Shown in pieces: positions 4,604-11,488 of a DNA stretch of 64,000 nt (its first letter is position 1; each line of letters opens with the position of its first letter). The translations under genes were made by a program, and so were the position numbers. The notes under the pieces were generated by a model, which saw only the letters and a program-made list of their open reading frames with translations, was not told where the DNA came from and did no database searches. Source of the stretch: Epithemia pelagica (Eukaryota; Protista; Bacillariophyta); NCBI GenBank assembly GCA_946965045.2, contig OX337242.1, positions 1,116,001-1,180,000 of the forward strand, read 5' to 3'.

Positions 4604-5511
4604 TCAGTTCCTTCGAAGGAAAAGCTTTCGAGCTGGCTCAATGGGACTTCCGCCATCGCTATTTGTCAGACCACCTCCTTTGATGATAGCGTACAGAACC
4701 ACACCGAGCAGTAACATGCAATTGATGAGAGCAAAGCATTGAATGAAGGAATCGGAAGCCATTCGCTTCCCAAATTGCTTCAGCAAGGCCTCTGCCCTAG
4801 CTAAGTTGTCGTCGATACGGTCTGCTTCTCGGTCAATATTATCGATCACGTTGCGCTGTCGTTCCAATTCTTCCAAGGTGGACACACCAACCTCCTTTGA
4901 CTGGGCAATCATACTTTTCGTATTAGCCAATGAATCTTGAGTTTTATCCTGTAACGCAGACGCATCTGCCAGCATTTTATCTCCAGCTTTTACTGCATCC
5001 ATACCACCATGTTCACCGTCAGGATCTCCACCTCGTGCTTCCACAAACAGTTCCCCGCGTTGTGTTTCGGCTTCCAAGGCCTTTGCATCCGCACTTAACG
5101 TTTTGAGTTTCTGGTCGAAGCTGGCCAGGCGAGACTCACATTTCCGTCGATCCGCAACATCGACAATAAGCCGTGTTTCCATTTTGTAACTTCGTTTCGT
5201 TCCCTTAGCTTGCCGCAAAATTTTTTTGCAGCGATCAATCGCCTCTGCTTTCTCCATATCATCTCGAATGTTCGGAATTTGATCGATCAAGTTTTCAATC
5301 TCTTCGACATCCTCCGATAGTTTATCATCCCAGTATTGAATATCGTCCGCCTATGGAGAGGTACATAAAAAGCCAACAAGAGTATCGAAATTTGGAAAAT
5401 TGAGCAAAAGCATAGACAAGACACATTCTCAGCACCGACAACATGTGAACTGGGTTCTACTATGCCCTTTCCCCTCCTCCTCACAAAAGAACGCAACATA
5501 TCACCCACCAT
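4604..5511 (-). CDS. Qb-type SNARE (VTI1/NPSN-like); first exon is the ATG only, intron 5351-5508
   Basis: ATG(5511-5509)|GTGGGT...ATAG|GCG GAC GAT ATT gives M-ADDIQYWDDKLSEDV. The protein has an N-terminal helical bundle, a SNARE coiled coil with Q layer (LEELERQRNVI) and a C-terminal TM (FIQCFALINCMLLLGVVLYAII). Confidence 0.85.
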
Positions 5512-6088
5512 GATGTTTGGTTAGATGAACACAGCACAGAAATGAAAATCCTCGATAGTCAAGATAGGTGTCTCGAGAGTCGAGAGTGAAGTCGACAGTG
5601 AAGAGTTACGATGACTTCGTCGTTGTGCCGGTTCGATAAGTTTTTGGCATTTCCCAAGTTCCAAGTCTTGTTTGCGGTAGGTATTAGGTAGCCACAAATG
5701 GGTCGGGATTGAGCAGGTAGCTCAGGTAAAAGTAGCCTTAGGTATATAGGTATTTGAAGGTAAGGGTCAGGAAAACCAGCTCCTATTGGTACTCCTAGAA
5801 GTAAGCTTCGAAATTCATCCCCTGTCCTTCTAGGTGGGATTATAATGAGGAGGTCCAAAATCTCTCTATAGAATGAACTTGTAGCAACATGTGACCATTC
5901 ACTGAAATTAAGCTTTCAAGGCGGATTTCGAGCAAAGTGAGGACAGTGAACCACGTATGTAGGGCCTGTGACTGTGAGTGGTCGTAAACGTAGCCGATTA
6001 GTGCTTCCCATTGAAGATTCGTCGACATTGGTCGTCGCCCCTTTTCTTGCGCCGGACTCCCATTGGTCCAACTCTTCCCAGTCGAGTT

Positions 6089-8260
6089 CTACGCAGGATT
6101 TTGTTTATCCGGTTTGGTAGCCACAATCAGTTGGGTTGTCTCTGGAACCAAATCGAGGACTTTCGGTGCAATAAATCCGGCTCCACAACGCTTATCGTTG
6201 CCACATAGAAGCTCGATGATACGATTGGGTCGAAGTCCCATGCCTTCCGGATTGACTGTTACATGTGCCAAGGCCCAGAGCGCAGCATTTTGTGGACCAC
6301 GACCGCTATTGTCGACAAAAAAGTCATGAAGGACTGCCAAACCACCGGGCTTGAGGGCTCGAAAAGCATTTCTATATAAGCCTTCGAGAGCTTGGTGAGG
6401 AATAGACCCACTGACATAGCTCATCAACACGACGTCAAAGGATTCAGGTTCAACCACTCCTTCCCAGTCTCCAGGAGCCGTCGCCGAAAGAGCCAACGTC
6501 GATACTCGTTCTCGCACCGAAATGTCGGGTTCTCGATTCACAATGCTTTGGGCAACTGTTACGACATTGGGTAAGTCCAGCACAACGCAACTGGCTTGAG
6601 GAATCTTCCGTGCCGTGGCAATGGAAAAGGCACCCGATCCCCCACCCACATCCAACATGCGCAGTGAGCTGCGCTCCTGGGCCAGTTCTGGCAGTCGCTT
6701 ATGGAGTGCATATGCCGTGGCCAATGATCCATTGTGTTGTGCTTTTGTGTATCGTTCCGCCGCTTCTGGATCGGATTCAAACCATGCCTCATACCCATGC
6801 GATGAGGTACTCCCTGATTCTAATGTACCGTGTAAATCTGCCATGCGGCTGTAGAATTGTGCGTCCACCTGTCCGGAGATATAATCACCCCAATATCGCT
6901 TGGATGAACGAACCAGTTGTTGAGCCGATGCTTTGGGGAGCGAAAACATCTCCAGGCCATCCGTTGTATATCGGCGACGAACAAGTGATAGGGCCACACA
7001 CGCTGAGAGCAACGTACGTAAGCGTTCTCCCTGCACGCTACACCGCTTCTCTATACTTTCAAAAGATGCCTCCGGTCGTTTCGAGCTGTCGCTCTCATTA
7101 GCAGCAACTGCGTCATGAATGGCATCAAATACGCCAGATCGAAGTCCTGAAAATAACGCTTTGCTGCCCATAAAGGCATAGGCAATCTCATCAATCTTTG
7201 GTTCTTCTTCCTTACCGCTGATCTCTTCCTCTTGAGCAGTCATGTTGCTATCCAAGAAGTTGCGAACAATCCGATGGAATGTATCTGCATGGCGTTGATG
7301 AAGATTGTGTTTGCCCTCCTCGAGAACCACTAGTTGCGAGGTTTTGATGTGTCGAGAAATATACTGCGCGTGCGACAAATCACAAATGACATCTTTGGCT
7401 CCATGTAACACCAACGTTGGGCATTGGACTTGATGAAGTTCGCGAAGACAGACATCGCCCGCCTTGTCCGTGTAGGAGCGGATCCATCCATCGGTGGCCC
7501 TGTCATTCAGTTCCTGTAACTCCTCTATACTTGTCAAACCAAGGCTTTTCATTTTGTCATTTCGAACGCGGTCGGACCAACTTGTTTCGACGTTGCGAAT
7601 GGCCTCCCAGGCATCGACATCCGCTTGTGTGACAAAGGCGTTGCCTCCCCAAACCACCAGATTTTGTACCCATGGTCGGGCAACCACACCGGCCAAGTGA
7701 ATTGCCACAATGGCTCCGTCTGACCATCCCATGACGCTGTAGGATTTGCGTTTGTCCTCGTTGGCAAGGATTGCTTGCATGACAGCGGCGGCATCAAGAG
7801 CATCCTGACGATAGAAATCCAGGGGATACTCCCGCGGGGCATTCTTGGGAAGGGCCGATCCTCCTAGCCCTCGGGGATCCAATGCAATGATTCCATAGGG
7901 TTCATCTGCTGCGTGCGCGATATTTTCCGTAGAAATTTGTTGGAGGCCAGTTTCTAGTAGTTGCGCAAAATCAGAAGATCCTGTTCCCAAGGCGCCTGGT
8001 AAACACAAGATGGAATGTCGTGCATCCGGATGGCGGATTGAAACACGGAACTCAGCTCCCCGTGCCTGCACCATTCTCGTTTCGAACTTTGAGGTTTCCT
8101 CAGCAACTTGATTTAGAAAGCTCCCATGATATGCTCGAAGCATCATGCTGCACCTCAACCGTTTGGAAGAGGGGGATACAACGGCCTGACATCGGGATGC
8201 AAGCCACCCCAAAGTTCGTTCTCTTTGAAGCAATGCTCCGGAGCGCAGCAACATGACCAT
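6089..8260 (-). CDS. Fusion protein: BPHL/valacyclovir-hydrolase-like alpha/beta hydrolase plus DsyB/DSYB-like SAM-dependent methyltransferase, with Arg-rich N-terminal presequence
   Basis: One uninterrupted 723-aa ORF. Hydrolase motifs: LPGALG, DPRGLG, GWSDG, HGAKD, GKHNLH. Methyltransferase motifs: IAYAFMGSKALF, DYISGQVD, YEAWF, YTKAQHNGSL, LDVGGGSGAFS, LMSY, HDF, GPQNAALWALAH. Confidence 0.9.
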   Translation of the reverse strand: MVMLLRSGALLQRERTLGWLASRCQAVVSPSSKRLRCSMMLRAYHGSFLNQVAEETSKFETRMVQARGAEFRVSIRHPDARHSILCLPGALGTGSSDFAQLLETGLQQISTENIAHAADEPYGIIALDPRGLGGSALPKNAPREYPLDFYRQDALDAAAVMQAILANEDKRKSYSVMGWSDGAIVAIHLAGVVARPWVQNLVVWGGNAFVTQADVDAWEAIRNVETSWSDRVRNDKMKSLGLTSIEELQELNDRATDGWIRSYTDKAGDVCLRELHQVQCPTLVLHGAKDVICDLSHAQYISRHIKTSQLVVLEEGKHNLHQRHADTFHRIVRNFLDSNMTAQEEEISGKEEEPKIDEIAYAFMGSKALFSGLRSGVFDAIHDAVAANESDSSKRPEASFESIEKRCSVQGERLRTLLSACVALSLVRRRYTTDGLEMFSLPKASAQQLVRSSKRYWGDYISGQVDAQFYSRMADLHGTLESGSTSSHGYEAWFESDPEAAERYTKAQHNGSLATAYALHKRLPELAQERSSLRMLDVGGGSGAFSIATARKIPQASCVVLDLPNVVTVAQSIVNREPDISVRERVSTLALSATAPGDWEGVVEPESFDVVLMSYVSGSIPHQALEGLYRNAFRALKPGGLAVLHDFFVDNSGRGPQNAALWALAHVTVNPEGMGLRPNRIIELLCGNDKRCGAGFIAPKVLDLVPETTQLIVATKPDKQNPA

Positions 8261-8718: not shown

Positions 8719-10194
8719 TTAGAGTTCCGTTGCACCACCTTTGGCCATTGTTTTGATAAAGTTTGTCACTCGCTTCCAAGTGATACTGCTGGCTTGCTCC
8801 AGGTACATGCGTTTGGGACTTGGATCTGTCTTTCCCGATGTCAGTCCTAATTCGACCGAAGTACTGGCTTTTAAGATAGCGATCTCATCTTCCATGCCTC
8901 GTTGGACTTTGACTCCCATTAACGGCACCTGAAAGTATTTGGTGGTCCACCACGGTAGCAGGGCCGAAACAAACCTCTCCCTCCAACTGCCTTCGTATTC
9001 ACTGCTTACGGAGATACTTTTCCATTCACTGCGAGGAGAACACGACAAGTTCCCCAGTTGGGTTTTGTGGTGGTTAGGAAGAGTTTCGTTGATTCCATAA
9101 ATTGGTTGCGTCTGTGTAATAGCCGGTGGATGACTTCCTGGCCATAGGTTGAAGAGCAAAACACTCCGTCCAAACAACTCTGGTTCGGACCGACGATCCT
9201 TTGCTCGTCGTGGATCACTCGGCATCAGGTACAGATTCGCCGGCCGTGGTACGGAGTGCAACAAATTTCCATTAAAACGGAGCAATCTTCCAGGCAAATT
9301 GGGCACGGCCAAGAGTTCCACATTGTCCAAAATCCATGGATCCTCCATATCAACTTGGTCCAGGCTATTGAATTTCTTTAGTATCATATCTCCTCCAGTG
9401 CTGGCATTCGCAAACACTAGAGTCGGTGCCTCTAACAGGGATTCACTGCCCTGTTCCAGATAGAGCACATGGCCAAACAAGGGATGTCGGACTTTGGGTT
9501 CCGGTATCCCAGATTGTAGCGCCTTGTTGAAAGTACCTTCGTCCTGATCGGCGTGGGCCTCTCTGCGATAGAATAGCACGACAAACAAAAGGGCGTTTCA
9601 AGCAAAGAACCGTGAGCCCACACATCGGACTTTCACCATTGATGTAGTTGCTGCAGACCCGAAACAGAGTATCATTTGGCTCGTCACAAATCACTGGACA
9701 ACATGACACTTTACTTACACCGACATCCAGTGTTGCCGATCCCAAAATTCCACCCAAAAGGCGGGTTTTGATGTATCTGCAGCTTCTTGTGGGTGTAACT
9801 GCGTCATGATATCGGATAGAATTTGTTCAATCCGATGTCGTCGCGCCAGTTCCGTAGCTGGAGTAGGCCATGGAAAAATCACGGTTTGTTCATGTTTCTC
9901 ATTCCCTCGTTCTTCGGCACGCACAATCAATGCTTGGCGCAATTCTTCCATGAAATTTTGCGAAAGAACATTGTCCCAAACATGAATGCATTCCGAACGT
10001 TGTCGCCATTGAGCAACCAACAAGGAGGGACCCGCTTGATAGCCACATGCAAGAGCCACGAGAACGACGAGAATGAACAAGGACTGGATCAGCGAGGAAG
10101 ATCCTTGACTCTGCTCGTTCTTCTGAGAAGTTGCTTTGTCAGTATGGTTGATAGCAACCACCTTTCGGGTTCTCCGTATCGTTGTTGTTGGCAT
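8719..10194 (-). CDS. Membrane-anchored diatom protein with HxD...H motif (putative Fe(II)/2OG-type oxygenase); intron 9563-9718
   Basis: Splicing GT|gtaagt...cgcag|AGAG joins two track ORFs into WVEFWDRQHWMSVEAHADQDE, followed by HPLFGHVLYL and RFNGNLLHSVPRP. An N-terminal TM is present (LFILVVLVALACGY). The function is inferred. Confidence 0.7.
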
Positions 10195-10432
10195 GGTGGA
10201 TAACGATGATGATGATAATAAATGAAGACTGGTCGAAGTCGAATGTGGTCGTCGGATCAGAAAGATTCCCAAAAGGTGAAAAAAATGCGAATTGCTTCCA
10301 ACGAAAGAAGCCACCACAGACCACAGGTGTGCTGGCGGCATACTCGTGACTCATCAAGTCCTCATTCAAGCACATTCAGGATCGATCACTCTTCACAAGG
10401 CAAGAATCCACTGGAAAGGACCAATCCAAGCC

Positions 10433-11488
10433 ATGACCATGCGACGGTCCAATCTTTGCTGTTTGTGGTTGTTTATGCTTGCTGGCTGGTCGTCTAGGGT
10501 GGTGATCCAGGCTCTTTCCTCCTCCCCCCAACCACCACCAGCAGCACTACAAAATAATCATTCTTCTCGTCGTTCCTACTTGGTGACGGGTGGCAACAAG
10601 GGACAAGGCTTGGCCTTGTGTCAACGCATTTTGCAAGAACATGAGGATACACACATCTTTTTGTGCAGTCGTGATGTCGAAAAAGGCCACGAGGCAGCGC
10701 ATTCCATCCTCCACCATGCAAAAGATATTCCAAACGACCGCATCACTGTCGTCCAACTCGATGTGACGGATGAGGCCTCGGTACAAGCGGCCTTCCAAAC
10801 CGTTCAAGACACCTTGAAGAAACAACAACAACAAGATGACGCAAAGCTTGTTTTGTCTGGTATCATTAGCAATGCCGGTATTTTATGGGGACATTCCTTC
10901 GACGAATTGGTTCAAGTCAATTGTTTGGGTGTCAAGCGAGTCTTGGATGCCTTTTGTCCCCTCCTGGATCCGAATACGGTTGGCCGTGTGATTGTCGTGT
11001 CGACCGGTCTATCGCCTCTCATGGTATCCTATTCACAGCATGCGAAAAAACTCTTGGATCCAATCTCGTGGGAGCAAACGCTCCAACCACTGCTCGAGCA
11101 GTGTTTGGCCAGCACGACACCCTCGGAATTGGAACAAATTGGATTTTCCGGTGGTCCCTTTGCTGAAGCGGTTCCGGAATTTCATCGGTATGGATTGGCC
11201 AAAATGTTTGCCGATTCGTACATGCGATACTTGGCGCTAAAACAACATGCTGGTTCCATAATAATCAATTCGGTCGGTCCAGGTTTGGTGTACACCGATT
11301 TGATTTTGGCCATGCCCAAATATCAAGGGCAAACCTTGGAAGAAACCAAGGCGAAAACGCCCGCACAAGGTGTGGAAGTCCATATGCGAGTCTTGTTTGA
11401 TAAAGACATTGAAACGGGGCAGTTTTATGCCATGAACAAGGCAGGAGAATTGAAACATGGGAATATTGACAAGCGACCGGACGTGTAA
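10433..11488 (+). CDS. Short-chain dehydrogenase/reductase (carbonyl-reductase-like) with signal peptide and S-rich extension
   Basis: Motifs TGGNKGQG, VQLDVTD, NAG and YGLAK (YxxxK). Hydrophobic leader LCCLWLFMLAGW. Confidence 0.9.
   Translation: MTMRRSNLCCLWLFMLAGWSSRVVIQALSSSPQPPPAALQNNHSSRRSYLVTGGNKGQGLALCQRILQEHEDTHIFLCSRDVEKGHEAAHSILHHAKDIPNDRITVVQLDVTDEASVQAAFQTVQDTLKKQQQQDDAKLVLSGIISNAGILWGHSFDELVQVNCLGVKRVLDAFCPLLDPNTVGRVIVVSTGLSPLMVSYSQHAKKLLDPISWEQTLQPLLEQCLASTTPSELEQIGFSGGPFAEAVPEFHRYGLAKMFADSYMRYLALKQHAGSIIINSVGPGLVYTDLILAMPKYQGQTLEETKAKTPAQGVEVHMRVLFDKDIETGQFYAMNKAGELKHGNIDKRPDV

What the first reader, a model, noticed from the sequence alone, without database searches (positions are those of the whole stretch)
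6089..8260. DsyB/DSYB-like (DMSP-synthesis) methyltransferase fused to an intact BPHL-like alpha/beta hydrolase
Seen in sequence: a single stop-free, intronless 723-aa ORF. The N-half (~8060-7255) has a complete serine-hydrolase triad in BPHL/valacyclovir-hydrolase style (GWSDG, HGAKD, GKHNLH). A short acidic linker (QEEEISGKEEEPK) precedes a methyltransferase (~7200-6089). Established knowledge, recalled rather than aligned: this half matches the bacterial DsyB MTHB S-methyltransferase signature blocks (AxMxSKALF; DY..xQVDxQxY; YxxWF.DPExA..Y...QHxGSL; DVGGGxGAF; MSY; HDF; GPxxAALWxLxH). The Tyr/Gln/Ser/His residues I recall as substrate- and SAM-binding in DsyB (Y97/Q101, Y129, Y142/Q146/S150, H291) appear with the same spacing (DYISGQ, GYEAW, RYTKAQHNGS, LAH). 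The characterised DsyB/DSYB enzymes I know are stand-alone, and I do not know a hydrolase fusion. Inference: this is an organelle-targeted (Arg-rich, mitochondrial-like leader) bifunctional enzyme. It may release MTHB or an analogue from an ester and then S-methylate it, or make a different sulfonium or methylated metabolite.
Basis: partly seen in the sequence, partly recalled or inferred. Interest (0 to 1): 0.9.

Follow-up and report, generated by a model that had tools for sequence, protein, structure and literature searches.

The report
Diatom DSYB fused to BPHL-like hydrolase
One diatom gene joins DSYB, the enzyme that commits methionine to the climate-relevant sulfur compound DMSP, to an intact hydrolase of the human BPHL (valacyclovir / homocysteine-thiolactone hydrolase) family; the DSYB half is already known and validated in a relative, but the conserved hydrolase half is not discussed in any paper I could search.

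Summary
Window 6089-8260 (-) is one unspliced 723-aa ORF with four parts:
- a basic leader (residues 1-56);
- a BPHL-family serine hydrolase (about 57-340);
- an acidic linker (341-353);
- a DsyB/DSYB-type methyltransferase (354-723).

The fusion is not unique to this genome. It defines one clade (support 100/100) of diatom and environmental proteins. That clade includes Fragilariopsis cylindrus OEU17621, a 705-aa protein that Wang et al. 2024 list as the previously ratified F. cylindrus DSYB. So this gene is an orthologue of a known, validated DSYB, and the claim that characterised DSYBs are stand-alone is wrong for diatoms.

The hydrolase domain does appear to be overlooked. Papers call DSYB "single-domain", and no searchable paper mentions the domain.

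The two halves diverged in step (r = 0.83). Their nearest stand-alone counterparts both occur in haptophytes. BPHL requires a free alpha-amino group, which argues against release of MTHB from an ester.

Verdict: a new member of a known kind with an under-described conserved domain. Interest is moderate.

The parts
6089..8260 (-). Complete coding sequence of the fused protein (723 codons plus the stop at 6089-6091), with no intron
   Evidence: ORF list. In-frame stop just upstream of the ATG. The RNA-like run X2 covers 5924-8244 with no splice joint, and its depth falls to about 2 in the upstream intergenic stretch.
8093..8260 (-). N-terminal leader, residues 1-56: basic, acid-poor and disordered; a probable mitochondrial presequence (inference)
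   Evidence: AlphaFold2 pLDDT is below 50 for residues 1-56. The first 45 residues hold 8 basic and 1 acidic residue, and the maximum hydropathy is too low for a signal peptide. Orthologue leaders have the same composition but no sequence conservation. A gene model from another assembly of the same species (P0180, 684 aa) starts at an internal Met, so the true start is not settled.
7241..8092 (-). BPHL-family alpha/beta-hydrolase domain, residues about 57-340
   Evidence: phmmer against human BPHL 2ocg gives E 1.1e-42. Foldseek gives TM 0.93-0.94 and rmsd 1.9 A against 2ocg/2ocl/2ock. Pfam finds Hydrolase_4, Abhydrolase_6 and Abhydrolase_1.
7718..7723 (-). Nucleophile Ser180 and the following Asp181 (human BPHL S122 and D123) in the GWSDG elbow
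   Evidence: Aligned to BPHL. The roles of S122 and D123 come from PMC4198189 and PMC7279318. Both are invariant in 30/30 fused proteins and across the whole BPHL family sampled.
7391..7393 (-). Triad Asp290 (BPHL D227)
   Evidence: Alignment. Invariant in 30/30 fused proteins.
7307..7309 (-). Triad His318 (BPHL H255)
   Evidence: Alignment. Invariant in 30/30 fused proteins.
7202..7240 (-). Acidic interdomain linker, residues 341-353
   Evidence: pLDDT is below 50 for residues 341-349. Identity to orthologues in the linker is 7-43%. X2 contig 7131-8244 crosses it.
6803..7201 (-). DSYB N-domain (dimerisation and substrate lid), residues 354-486, carrying Tyr460 and Gln464 (DsyB Y97 and Q101)
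   Evidence: Pfam Dimerisation domain over 355-441. Alignment to 7wdq/7wdw. Domain limits of DsyB come from PMC10989797. The two residues are invariant in 33/33.
6092..6802 (-). DSYB Rossmann-fold catalytic domain, residues 487-723, carrying Tyr490, Tyr504, Gln508, Ser512 and His666 (DsyB Y129, Y142, Q146, S150, H291)
   Evidence: The best structural match among methyltransferases is DsyB 7wdq.
6626..6652 (-). SAM-binding glycine-rich motif DVGGGSGAF, residues 537-545 (DsyB G173 region)
   Evidence: Alignment. G539, G540 and G541 are invariant. The G173 column is G in 33/33 fused proteins.

Best explanation
This is the diatom form of DSYB. It is one nuclear gene and one mRNA, and it encodes an organelle-targeted polypeptide (most likely mitochondrial) with two independently active catalytic modules.

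[quoted passage not shown] It makes DMSHB, the committed step of the transamination route to DMSP. Like DsyB, it probably dimerises through its N-domain.

The N-terminal module (about 57-340) is a catalytically competent BPHL-type serine hydrolase. It should act on small (thio)esters that carry a free alpha-amino or other cationic group. Homocysteine thiolactone or amino-acid esters are the best guesses. That would make it a housekeeping or repair reaction of methionine/SAM metabolism rather than a step of the DMSP pathway.

The two were joined once, in an ancestor of centric and pennate diatoms, from genes that remain separate in haptophytes. They have been inherited and constrained together since.

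Shown here: the gene structure, the domain identities, residue conservation, the single origin, orthology to a ratified DSYB, and unspliced RNA coverage across the linker.

Inferred: the MTHB activity of this particular protein, the hydrolase substrate, the targeting, and any functional coupling between the halves.
For: Domain identity:
- BPHL E 1e-42 and DsyB/DSYB E 1e-40, against 4e-9 for the next methyltransferase.
- Fold match TM 0.94 to BPHL; the best methyltransferase match is DsyB.

Orthology to a ratified enzyme:
- OEU17621 (P0185, 705 aa) has the same architecture, with 53% identity over 97% of the query for its cluster representative P0022.
- It lies in the same clade, supported 100/100.
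- It is listed among 'previously ratified enzymes' as the F. cylindrus DSYB.

Active sites:
- MTHB-binding residues Y97, Q101, Y129, Y142, Q146 and H291, and SAM-binding residues S150, G173, D196 and S239 (defined in PMC10989797), are invariant in 33 fused sequences.
- A non-DsyB outgroup lacks Y97, Q101, Q146 and S239.
- BPHL S122, D123, D227 and H255 are invariant in 30/30.

A real fusion under selection:
- Hydrolase identity is 41-62% and methyltransferase identity 49-78%, while the linker and leader are unconserved.
- Divergence of the two halves correlates at r = 0.83, with 0 of 999 Mantel permutations reaching it.
- Each half forms a single clade.
- AlphaFold2 gives pTM 0.81 for the whole chain.

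Transcript: X2 contigs cover 5924-8244, one crosses the linker, and no joint lies inside the gene.

Hydrolase specificity: BPHL hydrolyses homocysteine thiolactone with kcat/Km 7.7e4 M-1 s-1 and needs the free alpha-amino group.
Against: - No enzymology exists for this protein or for the hydrolase domain of any orthologue.
- I could not read Curson et al. 2018, so I do not know whether the full-length F. cylindrus protein or only its methyltransferase part was assayed.
- DsyB SAM-binding D223 is Ser in the whole fused clade. The ratified F. cylindrus protein and 16 of 75 stand-alone eukaryotic DSYBs share this.
- The BPHL acyl-pocket columns are only partly conserved relative to human BPHL: I158 is Ala here and G161 is Ala or Ser. 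They do resemble the stand-alone algal relatives.
- The RNA evidence comes from assembled contigs of one run whose library type is only guessed. A contig is not proof of a single molecule.
- Targeting rests on composition alone.
- A housekeeping role does not by itself explain why the fusion is retained in every DSYB-bearing diatom.
Confidence: 0.75

Rival explanations
1. The hydrolase domain is a second enzyme of sulfonium (DMSP) metabolism, which would make diatom DSYB a true bifunctional pathway enzyme analogous to bacterial DsyGD. It could process a cationic (thio)ester or lactone related to DMSHB or SAM. It could remove mis-methylated ester by-products of the methyltransferase. Least likely chemically, it could carry out or assist the still-unassigned DMSHB to DMSP step in algae.
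For: - The fusion is retained in every full-length member of the diatom DSYB clade, and the two halves co-diverge.
- pTM 0.81 suggests a defined interdomain arrangement.
- Both domains exist as separate genes in DSYB-bearing haptophytes, which is a Rosetta-stone pattern.
- DsyGD sets a precedent for a fused DMSP enzyme.
- The Asp that binds a cationic group is invariant and could in principle bind a sulfonium.
Against: - The transamination pathway as described has no ester or thioester intermediate.
- The domain is an unremodelled BPHL. Its pocket columns match the stand-alone algal relatives.
- BPHL-family proteins are widespread in animals and bacteria that have no DSYB.
- A cofactor-free serine hydrolase is a poor candidate for an oxidative decarboxylation (my own knowledge).
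- Most DSYB-bearing lineages work with a stand-alone enzyme.
Confidence: 0.15
2. The methyltransferase half has drifted to another substrate in this lineage. It would then make a different sulfonium or methylated metabolite, so the protein would be DSYB-like but not a DMSP-synthesis enzyme.
For: - The fused clade sits on its own long branch (length 0.37-0.49), separate from the stand-alone eukaryotic clade.
- SAM-site D223 is replaced by Ser.
- Authors in the field warn that homology alone has misassigned DMSP enzymes.
Against: - All six MTHB-binding residues are invariant.
- A member of the same clade, F. cylindrus OEU17621, is listed as experimentally ratified. It shares Ser at the D223 position and is 67% identical in this domain.
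Confidence: 0.07
3. The hydrolase half is a non-catalytic appendage, such as a scaffold, a regulatory domain or a relic. Alternatively, the long ORF is an annotation or assembly artefact that joins two genes.
For: - Some database gene models split the locus into a hydrolase-only and a methyltransferase-only protein, for example P0029 plus P0059, and Epithemia P0220.
- The literature treats DSYB as single-domain.
Against: - The triad and the specificity Asp are invariant in 30/30, and hydrolase identity is 41-62%. A relic would decay.
- There is no stop or frame change between the halves in this window.
- The same continuous ORF occurs in more than 30 independent assemblies. One example is P0178, 709 aa, whose C-half is the 'split' model P0059.
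- An RNA contig crosses the linker.
Confidence: 0.03

Closest known systems
Fragilariopsis cylindrus CCMP1102 DSYB (OEU17621.1; JGI 238045 per PMC12614181), ratified by Curson et al. 2018
   Same: - It has the same two-domain architecture (705 aa) and lies in the same clade (100/100).
- Its cluster representative is 53% identical overall. It is 67% identical in the methyltransferase half and 53% in the hydrolase half.
- It has the same invariant residues in both active sites, including Ser at the DsyB D223 position.
   Different: - It comes from a different species, and its leader and linker are unrelated in sequence.
- NCBI names it only 'alpha/beta-hydrolase'.
- The papers I could read describe it only as a DSYB and do not mention the hydrolase half.
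Stand-alone eukaryotic DSYB (haptophytes, dinoflagellates, corals; e.g. Chrysochromulina tobin KOO32714)
   Same: - The same methyltransferase family, 40-44% identical.
- The same MTHB and SAM residues.
- It groups with the fused clade against bacterial DsyB (89/83).
   Different: - It is single-domain, about 340-430 aa, and forms a separate clade (95/99).
- It has no hydrolase domain.
- In Prymnesium and Tisochrysis a BPHL-like protein is encoded by a separate gene.
Bacterial DsyB (Nisaea denitrificans, PDB 7WDQ/7WDW)
   Same: - E about 1e-40, about 30% identity in the structural alignment, and the same two-domain methyltransferase fold.
- All mutationally tested MTHB residues are conserved.
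   Different: - It is bacterial, stand-alone and 337 aa.
- D223 is kept in most bacterial sequences but is Ser here.
Human BPHL (valacyclovir hydrolase / homocysteine thiolactonase; PDB 2OCG)
   Same: - E 1e-42, 33-34% identity, TM 0.93-0.94, rmsd 1.9 A.
- The S-D-H triad is conserved, as is the unusual Asp directly after the nucleophile that binds the substrate's alpha-amino group.
   Different: - It is a stand-alone protein of about 290 aa.
- Two acyl-pocket positions differ: I158 is Ala here, and G161 is Ala or Ser.
- No link to a methyltransferase is known.
DsyGD of Gynuella sunshinyii (bifunctional DMSP enzyme)
   Same: It is a precedent for an MTHB S-methyltransferase fused to a second catalytic domain.
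   Different: - Its methyltransferase belongs to the DsyG/DSYE/TpMMT lineage (PF08241), not to DsyB/DSYB.
- Its partner domain is an ureidoglycolate-lyase-like decarboxylase at the C-terminus, not an N-terminal serine hydrolase.
Bacterial 'bifunctional alpha/beta hydrolase / class I SAM-dependent methyltransferase' proteins (Methyltransf_20) and BioC-BioH-type fusions
   Same: The domain order and the general pairing of domain classes are the same. They are the nearest hits by language-model features and in AlphaFold DB clusters.
   Different: - Both halves belong to unrelated families.
- The Atlas score of 0.88 is a lead only, and TM is below 0.5.
- There is no shared ancestry with the BPHL-DSYB fusion.

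Membership tests
DsyB/DSYB (MTHB S-methyltransferase) | Sequence similarity to ratified DsyB/DSYB clearly above that to other Methyltransf_2 enzymes | tested here: met
   E is 3e-40 and 8e-40 to 7wdw and 7wdq, against 3.7e-9 for the next methyltransferase, DnrK.
DsyB/DSYB (MTHB S-methyltransferase) | Phylogenetic placement inside the clade bracketed by functionally ratified members | tested here: met
   - It is in one clade (100/100) with F. cylindrus OEU17621, which is listed as ratified.
- That clade joins stand-alone eukaryotic DSYB (89/83) and is separate from bacterial DsyB (99/95).
- Caveat: I used a single, very long-branched outgroup.
DsyB/DSYB (MTHB S-methyltransferase) | MTHB-binding residues Y97, Q101, Y129, Y142, Q146 and H291 (N. 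denitrificans numbering) | tested here: met
   All six are present here as Y460, Q464, Y490, Y504, Q508 and H666, and are invariant in 33 fused sequences.
DsyB/DSYB (MTHB S-methyltransferase) | SAM-binding residues S150, G173, D196, D223, A224 and S239 | tested here: met
   Five of six are identical. D223 is Ser592, as it is in the ratified F. cylindrus enzyme and in 16/75 stand-alone eukaryotic DSYBs.
DsyB/DSYB (MTHB S-methyltransferase) | N-terminal dimerisation domain plus a Rossmann-fold C-domain | tested here: met
   Pfam finds Dimerisation plus Methyltransf_2. The AlphaFold2 model's best methyltransferase match in the PDB is DsyB.
DsyB/DSYB (MTHB S-methyltransferase) | SAM-dependent MTHB to DMSHB activity, and DMSP production by the organism | not testable with these tools
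   This needs enzyme assays or metabolite measurements. Only the F. cylindrus orthologue is reported as ratified.
BPHL (alpha-amino-acid ester hydrolase / homocysteine thiolactonase) | Sequence and fold similarity to BPHL | tested here: met
   - E 1.1e-42.
- TM 0.93-0.94 and rmsd 1.9 A.
- It nests in a family tree with animal, haptophyte and bacterial BPHL-like proteins.
BPHL (alpha-amino-acid ester hydrolase / homocysteine thiolactonase) | Catalytic triad S122-D227-H255 | tested here: met
   S180, D290 and H318 are invariant in 30/30.
BPHL (alpha-amino-acid ester hydrolase / homocysteine thiolactonase) | Asp directly after the nucleophile (D123), pointing into the pocket and binding the substrate's alpha-amino group | tested here: met
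   D181 is invariant in the fused clade and in nearly all sampled family members. Its side-chain orientation was not inspected in the model.
BPHL (alpha-amino-acid ester hydrolase / homocysteine thiolactonase) | Hydrophobic acyl pocket (I158, G161, I162, L229) and lid residues (L53, L179) | tested here: inconclusive
   - L53 is L, I162 is I/V/L and L229 is I/V/M, so these are kept.
- I158 is A and G161 is A/S.
- The L179 column is gapped in 28 of 30 aligned orthologues.
- The pattern matches the stand-alone algal relatives rather than human BPHL.
BPHL (alpha-amino-acid ester hydrolase / homocysteine thiolactonase) | Hydrolysis of alpha-amino-acid esters or homocysteine thiolactone | not testable with these tools
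   This needs an enzyme assay.
DsyGD-type bifunctional DMSP synthase | DsyG-type methyltransferase (PF08241 lineage) fused to a DsyD decarboxylase domain (PF04115) | tested here: not met
   Pfam finds Methyltransf_2 with a Dimerisation domain, plus alpha/beta-hydrolase families, and no PF04115.

The most novel reading that the evidence does not exclude
The invariant BPHL domain may be functionally coupled to sulfonium synthesis. Diatom DSYB would then be a genuinely bifunctional enzyme whose hydrolase half acts on a cationic (thio)ester or lactone of the methionine/SAM/DMSHB network. That would give the BPHL family, whose physiological role is still debated, its first pathway context. It would also identify a second, unrecognised reaction tied to DMSP production in diatoms.
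Probability: 0.2. Interest if true: 0.75.

Novelty: new member of a known kind. Interest (0 to 1): 0.45.

Why it matters
DSYB is used as the marker gene for predicting which algae make DMSP, a major marine sulfur compound and the precursor of the climate-active gas DMS.

Three consequences follow from showing that the whole diatom DSYB lineage, including the validated F. cylindrus enzyme, is a two-domain protein with an intact, constrained BPHL-type hydrolase:

1. It corrects the working description of DSYB as single-domain.
2. It warns that database names such as 'valacyclovir hydrolase', 'alpha/beta-hydrolase' and 'pimeloyl-ACP methyl ester carboxylesterase/UbiE' hide diatom DSYBs, and that split gene models undercount them.
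3. It offers a Rosetta-stone lead that connects BPHL-type hydrolases to methionine-derived sulfonium metabolism. This can be tested with simple assays.

It does not reveal a new enzyme family or a new pathway.

Tried and rejected
1. Curson et al. 2018, the paper that ratified F. cylindrus DSYB, is not held by PubMed id or DOI. I therefore could not learn whether the full-length protein was expressed or whether the hydrolase domain is mentioned there. Lai et al. 2008 (BPHL structure) is not held either, so I used a review and the thiolactonase paper instead.

2. Five literature searches for any description of the fusion found nothing relevant:
   - DSYB with hydrolase, fusion and diatom;
   - DSYB with valacyclovir hydrolase;
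   - DSYB with hydrolase;
   - DSYB with bifunctional and Fragilariopsis;
   - terms inside a 2026 ISME J paper.
   Absence from this library is not proof of absence.

3. The 'mini-cluster' idea from the earlier scan note (fusion plus oxygenase plus SDR) does not hold up. The SDR and the 8719-10341 gene have no homologue within 8 kb of the orthologous gene in three other diatoms. Only the downstream SNARE gene is shared, and only with the closest relative. I rejected it as a conserved cluster.

4. The poly(A) check on two mRNA-sized environmental contigs carrying the full ORF (L004, L005) found no tails and was uninformative.

5. AlphaFold DB clusters and the ESM Atlas returned only unrelated hydrolase-methyltransferase fusions or single-domain matches.

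6. The genomic context of the 'stand-alone' Epithemia hydrolase P0220 is not on record. I cannot show that it is a split gene model, although it nests inside the fused clade.

7. I could not examine the interdomain geometry of the model because coordinates and PAE are not available. Only pTM 0.81 is known.
Full report
THE OBSERVATION

Window 6089-8260 on the minus strand is a single ATG-initiated ORF of 723 codons. An in-frame stop lies three codons upstream of the ATG, and the window holds no paralogue.

Pfam finds alpha/beta-hydrolase families over residues 84-328, the O-methyltransferase dimerisation domain over 355-441 and Methyltransf_2 over 532-685.

Against all PDB sequences:
- the N-half matches human BPHL (valacyclovir hydrolase, 2ocg) at E 1.1e-42;
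- the C-half matches DsyB/DSYB (7wdq, 7wdw) at E 3-8e-40;
- the next methyltransferase reaches only 3.7e-9.

An AlphaFold2 model built on 30 orthologues has mean pLDDT 78 and pTM 0.81. Residues 1-56 are disordered and the linker (341-349) has low confidence. Its hydrolase domain superposes on BPHL at TM 0.93-0.94 and 1.9 A rmsd, and its best methyltransferase match is DsyB.

ONE GENE, ONE TRANSCRIPT

Of four public runs that hold this stretch, X2 behaves like RNA:
- Its depth is 188-292 over the gene and falls to about 2 in the upstream intergenic stretch.
- It carries clean minus-strand GT..AG joints in both neighbouring genes (5349/5508 and 9562/9719).
- It has none inside 6089-8260.
- Its contig 7131-8244 runs from codon 6 through the linker into the methyltransferase, and further contigs continue to 5924.

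This is contig-level evidence from one run whose library type is only guessed, so it is supportive rather than conclusive.

The stronger argument is comparative. More than 30 independent assemblies carry the same continuous ORF. Where databases show 'split' proteins, they are halves of a full-length model. For example, P0059 matches the C-half of the 709-aa P0178 almost exactly.

WHAT THE METHYLTRANSFERASE HALF IS

Li et al. 2022 (PMC10989797) define the MTHB-binding residues Y97, Q101, Y129, Y142, Q146 and H291, and the SAM-binding residues S150, G173, D196, D223, A224 and S239.

Across 33 fused sequences every one is invariant except D223, which is Ser throughout the clade. Ser is also found at that position in 16 of 75 stand-alone eukaryotic DSYBs. 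A non-DsyB outgroup lacks Y97, Q101, Q146 and S239.

Maximum-likelihood trees of the methyltransferase domain give three groups:
- all fused proteins, supported 100/100 in the careful 73-row tree (SH-aLRT 100 in the 152-row quick tree);
- bacterial DsyB (99/95);
- stand-alone eukaryotic DSYB (95/99).

The fused and eukaryotic groups join against the bacterial group at 89/83 (quick tree of 152 rows; careful tree of 73 rows).

THE DECISIVE LINK TO A RATIFIED ENZYME

The fused clade contains F. cylindrus CCMP1102 OEU17621.1, a 705-aa protein that NCBI names 'alpha/beta-hydrolase'. Supplementary Table 10 of Wang et al. 2024 (PMC11306096), headed 'previously ratified enzymes', lists OEU17621 as the F. 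cylindrus DSYB. Two other papers treat the same protein as the diatom DSYB:
- PMC12614181 cites JGI 238045 as cloned and functionally characterised.
- PMC11347835 names OEU17621 as a DSYB orthologue.

The MMETSP table of Li et al. 2022 already counts DSYB in Skeletonema, Nitzschia, Pseudo-nitzschia and Licmophora. The Skeletonema marinoi and Nitzschia proteins I recovered are full-length fusions. From Pseudo-nitzschia I recovered only a hydrolase-half fragment, which nests in the fused clade.

The window's gene is therefore an orthologue of a known, validated DSYB.

WHAT THE HYDROLASE HALF IS

Human BPHL has the triad S122-D227-H255. Its D123 neutralises the substrate's alpha-amino group, and this Asp after the nucleophile is the family's hallmark (PMC4198189, PMC7279318). 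Here these residues are S180, D290, H318 and D181. All four are invariant in 30 of 30 fused proteins and across the BPHL family sampled.

The acyl-pocket columns are hydrophobic but not identical to human BPHL: I158 is Ala, and G161 is Ala or Ser. They match the stand-alone algal relatives, so the domain has not been visibly remodelled after fusion.

In a tree of hydrolase domains, the fused halves again form one clade. Its sister group (support 98) contains stand-alone proteins of the haptophytes Prymnesium parvum and Tisochrysis lutea. Animal and bacterial BPHL-like proteins lie further out.

BPHL hydrolyses L-homocysteine thiolactone efficiently (454 U/mg, kcat/Km 7.7e4 M-1 s-1). It is inactive (below 0.001 U/mg) on gamma-thiobutyrolactone and on N-acetyl-homocysteine thiolactone, so it needs the free alpha-amino group. 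MTHB carries a hydroxyl at that position.

HISTORY OF THE FUSION

- Hydrolase identity to the window protein is 41-62% and methyltransferase identity 49-78%, while the leader and linker are not conserved.
- Pairwise divergence of the two halves correlates at r = 0.83, with 0 of 999 Mantel permutations as high. The hydrolase evolves about 1.2 times faster.
- Named members include pennates (Seminavis, Nitzschia, Fragilariopsis, a Bacillariaceae MAG). They also include Thalassiosirales (Skeletonema; a fragment from Mediolabrus). This points to one fusion event before those lineages split (the phylogenetic relation of these groups is from my own knowledge).
- An exhaustive HMMER scan of 1.84 billion cluster representatives finds full-length fusions in only two 50%-identity clusters, plus fragments that cross the linker.
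- Other DSYB-like proteins with long N-terminal extensions (P0050, P0395) have no recognisable domain there.

The architecture is a single, narrow, old lineage.

TARGETING

The first 45 residues hold 8 basic and 1 acidic residue and no hydrophobic core. About 20 full-length orthologues have leaders of the same composition but unrelated sequence. This fits a mitochondrial presequence rather than the signal-peptide-led plastid import of diatoms. It also agrees with reports that DSYB is found in mitochondria and chloroplasts and that the Incisomonas DSYB has a mitochondrial transit peptide. It remains an inference, because no predictor was available. A gene model from another assembly of the same species starts at Met40, so the start codon is not settled.

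SURROUNDINGS

An earlier scan note (s1-235516) proposed a DMSP mini-cluster made of this gene, an oxygenase and an SDR.
- The upstream gene (8719-10341, one intron at 9563-9718, 488 codons) has no Pfam or PDB sequence match and only a weak Atlas lead to 2OG-Fe(II) oxygenases.
- The next gene is an SDR.
- Neither has a homologue within 8 kb of the orthologous gene in three other diatoms. Only the downstream V-SNARE gene is shared, and only with the closest relative.

A conserved cluster is not supported.

MECHANISM

Most likely (0.75 for the whole picture): an organelle-targeted, probably dimeric DSYB that methylates MTHB to DMSHB. It carries a catalytically live BPHL-type hydrolase that acts on alpha-amino (thio)esters such as homocysteine thiolactone, which would be a methionine/SAM housekeeping activity.

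Rivals:
- the hydrolase is a second step or a proofreading activity of sulfonium metabolism (0.15);
- the methyltransferase has another substrate (0.07);
- the hydrolase is a non-catalytic appendage, or the ORF is an artefact (0.03).

NOVELTY

The gene is a new member of a known kind. What seems unreported is the conserved hydrolase domain. Wang et al. 2024 describe DSYB as a single-domain enzyme, and five literature searches found no mention of the domain. The original 2018 paper could not be read, so I cannot rule out prior mention there.

Noticed in passing
window 8719-10341 (-): The two ORFs 9715-10341 and 8719-9588 are exons of one gene. Run X2 joins 9562 to 9719 (a 156-nt GT..AG intron), giving a clean 488-codon reading frame. 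There is no Pfam family and no PDB sequence match. The Atlas gives only a weak lead to 2OG-Fe(II) oxygenases (score 0.90, 150 shared features). It is not a neighbour of DSYB in three other diatoms.
   Followed up: partly
window 10292-11488 (+): A short-chain dehydrogenase/reductase (adh_short, E 2.5e-18) with a hydrophobic N-terminal stretch, divergent from the gene above. The earlier scan note s1-235516 proposed a DMSP mini-cluster including an SDR reductase here. It has no homologue near the orthologous DSYB loci L001-L003.
   Followed up: partly
window 4604-5628 (-): A V-SNARE (Vti1/Sec20-like) gene directly downstream of DSYB. Run X2 shows a 158-nt GT..AG intron (5350-5507) and very high RNA depth. 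The same gene follows DSYB in the closest relative (L001 11121-11765). It is the only conserved neighbour.
   Followed up: partly
window 6246-6371: The DNA-like runs X3 and X4 carry a second version of this stretch alongside the reference version. It has 4 substitutions and a 1-base deletion at 6274, at about a third of the depth. The deletion would shift the frame near residue 662 of the methyltransferase. It could be a damaged second allele, a paralogous fragment elsewhere in the genome, or an assembly artefact. It is not seen in the RNA-like run X2.
   Followed up: no
window 6556-6616: Contigs of X1, X3 and X4 show a 59-base skip (TG..CG, short side 28 letters, 'between: not known') inside the methyltransferase coding region. 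It is not an intron signature and is absent from X2. It is probably a graph artefact or allelic variation.
   Followed up: no
L003 1028-3088 (Seminavis robusta): In Seminavis the fused DSYB gene, which has introns there, lies next to a divergently oriented TauD-family Fe(II)/2OG dioxygenase and a Methyltransf_3 O-methyltransferase. It is unrelated in sequence to the window's upstream gene. The coincidence of an oxygenase-like neighbour in two diatoms may be chance.
   Followed up: no
P0050 (Durusdinium trenchii, 620 aa) and P0395 (568 aa): These DSYB-like proteins have N-terminal extensions of about 250-285 residues with no Pfam domain. They may be other, uncharacterised DSYB fusions, or mis-predicted gene models.
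   Followed up: partly
L005 (contig of P0028), whole: The most divergent fused proteins (P0027 and P0028, 43-44% identical overall) sit on environmental contigs. The one contig I examined (P0028, L005) has 61% G+C, far above this window's 44-52%. The fusion may therefore extend to a lineage other than typical diatoms; its taxon is unknown.
   Followed up: no
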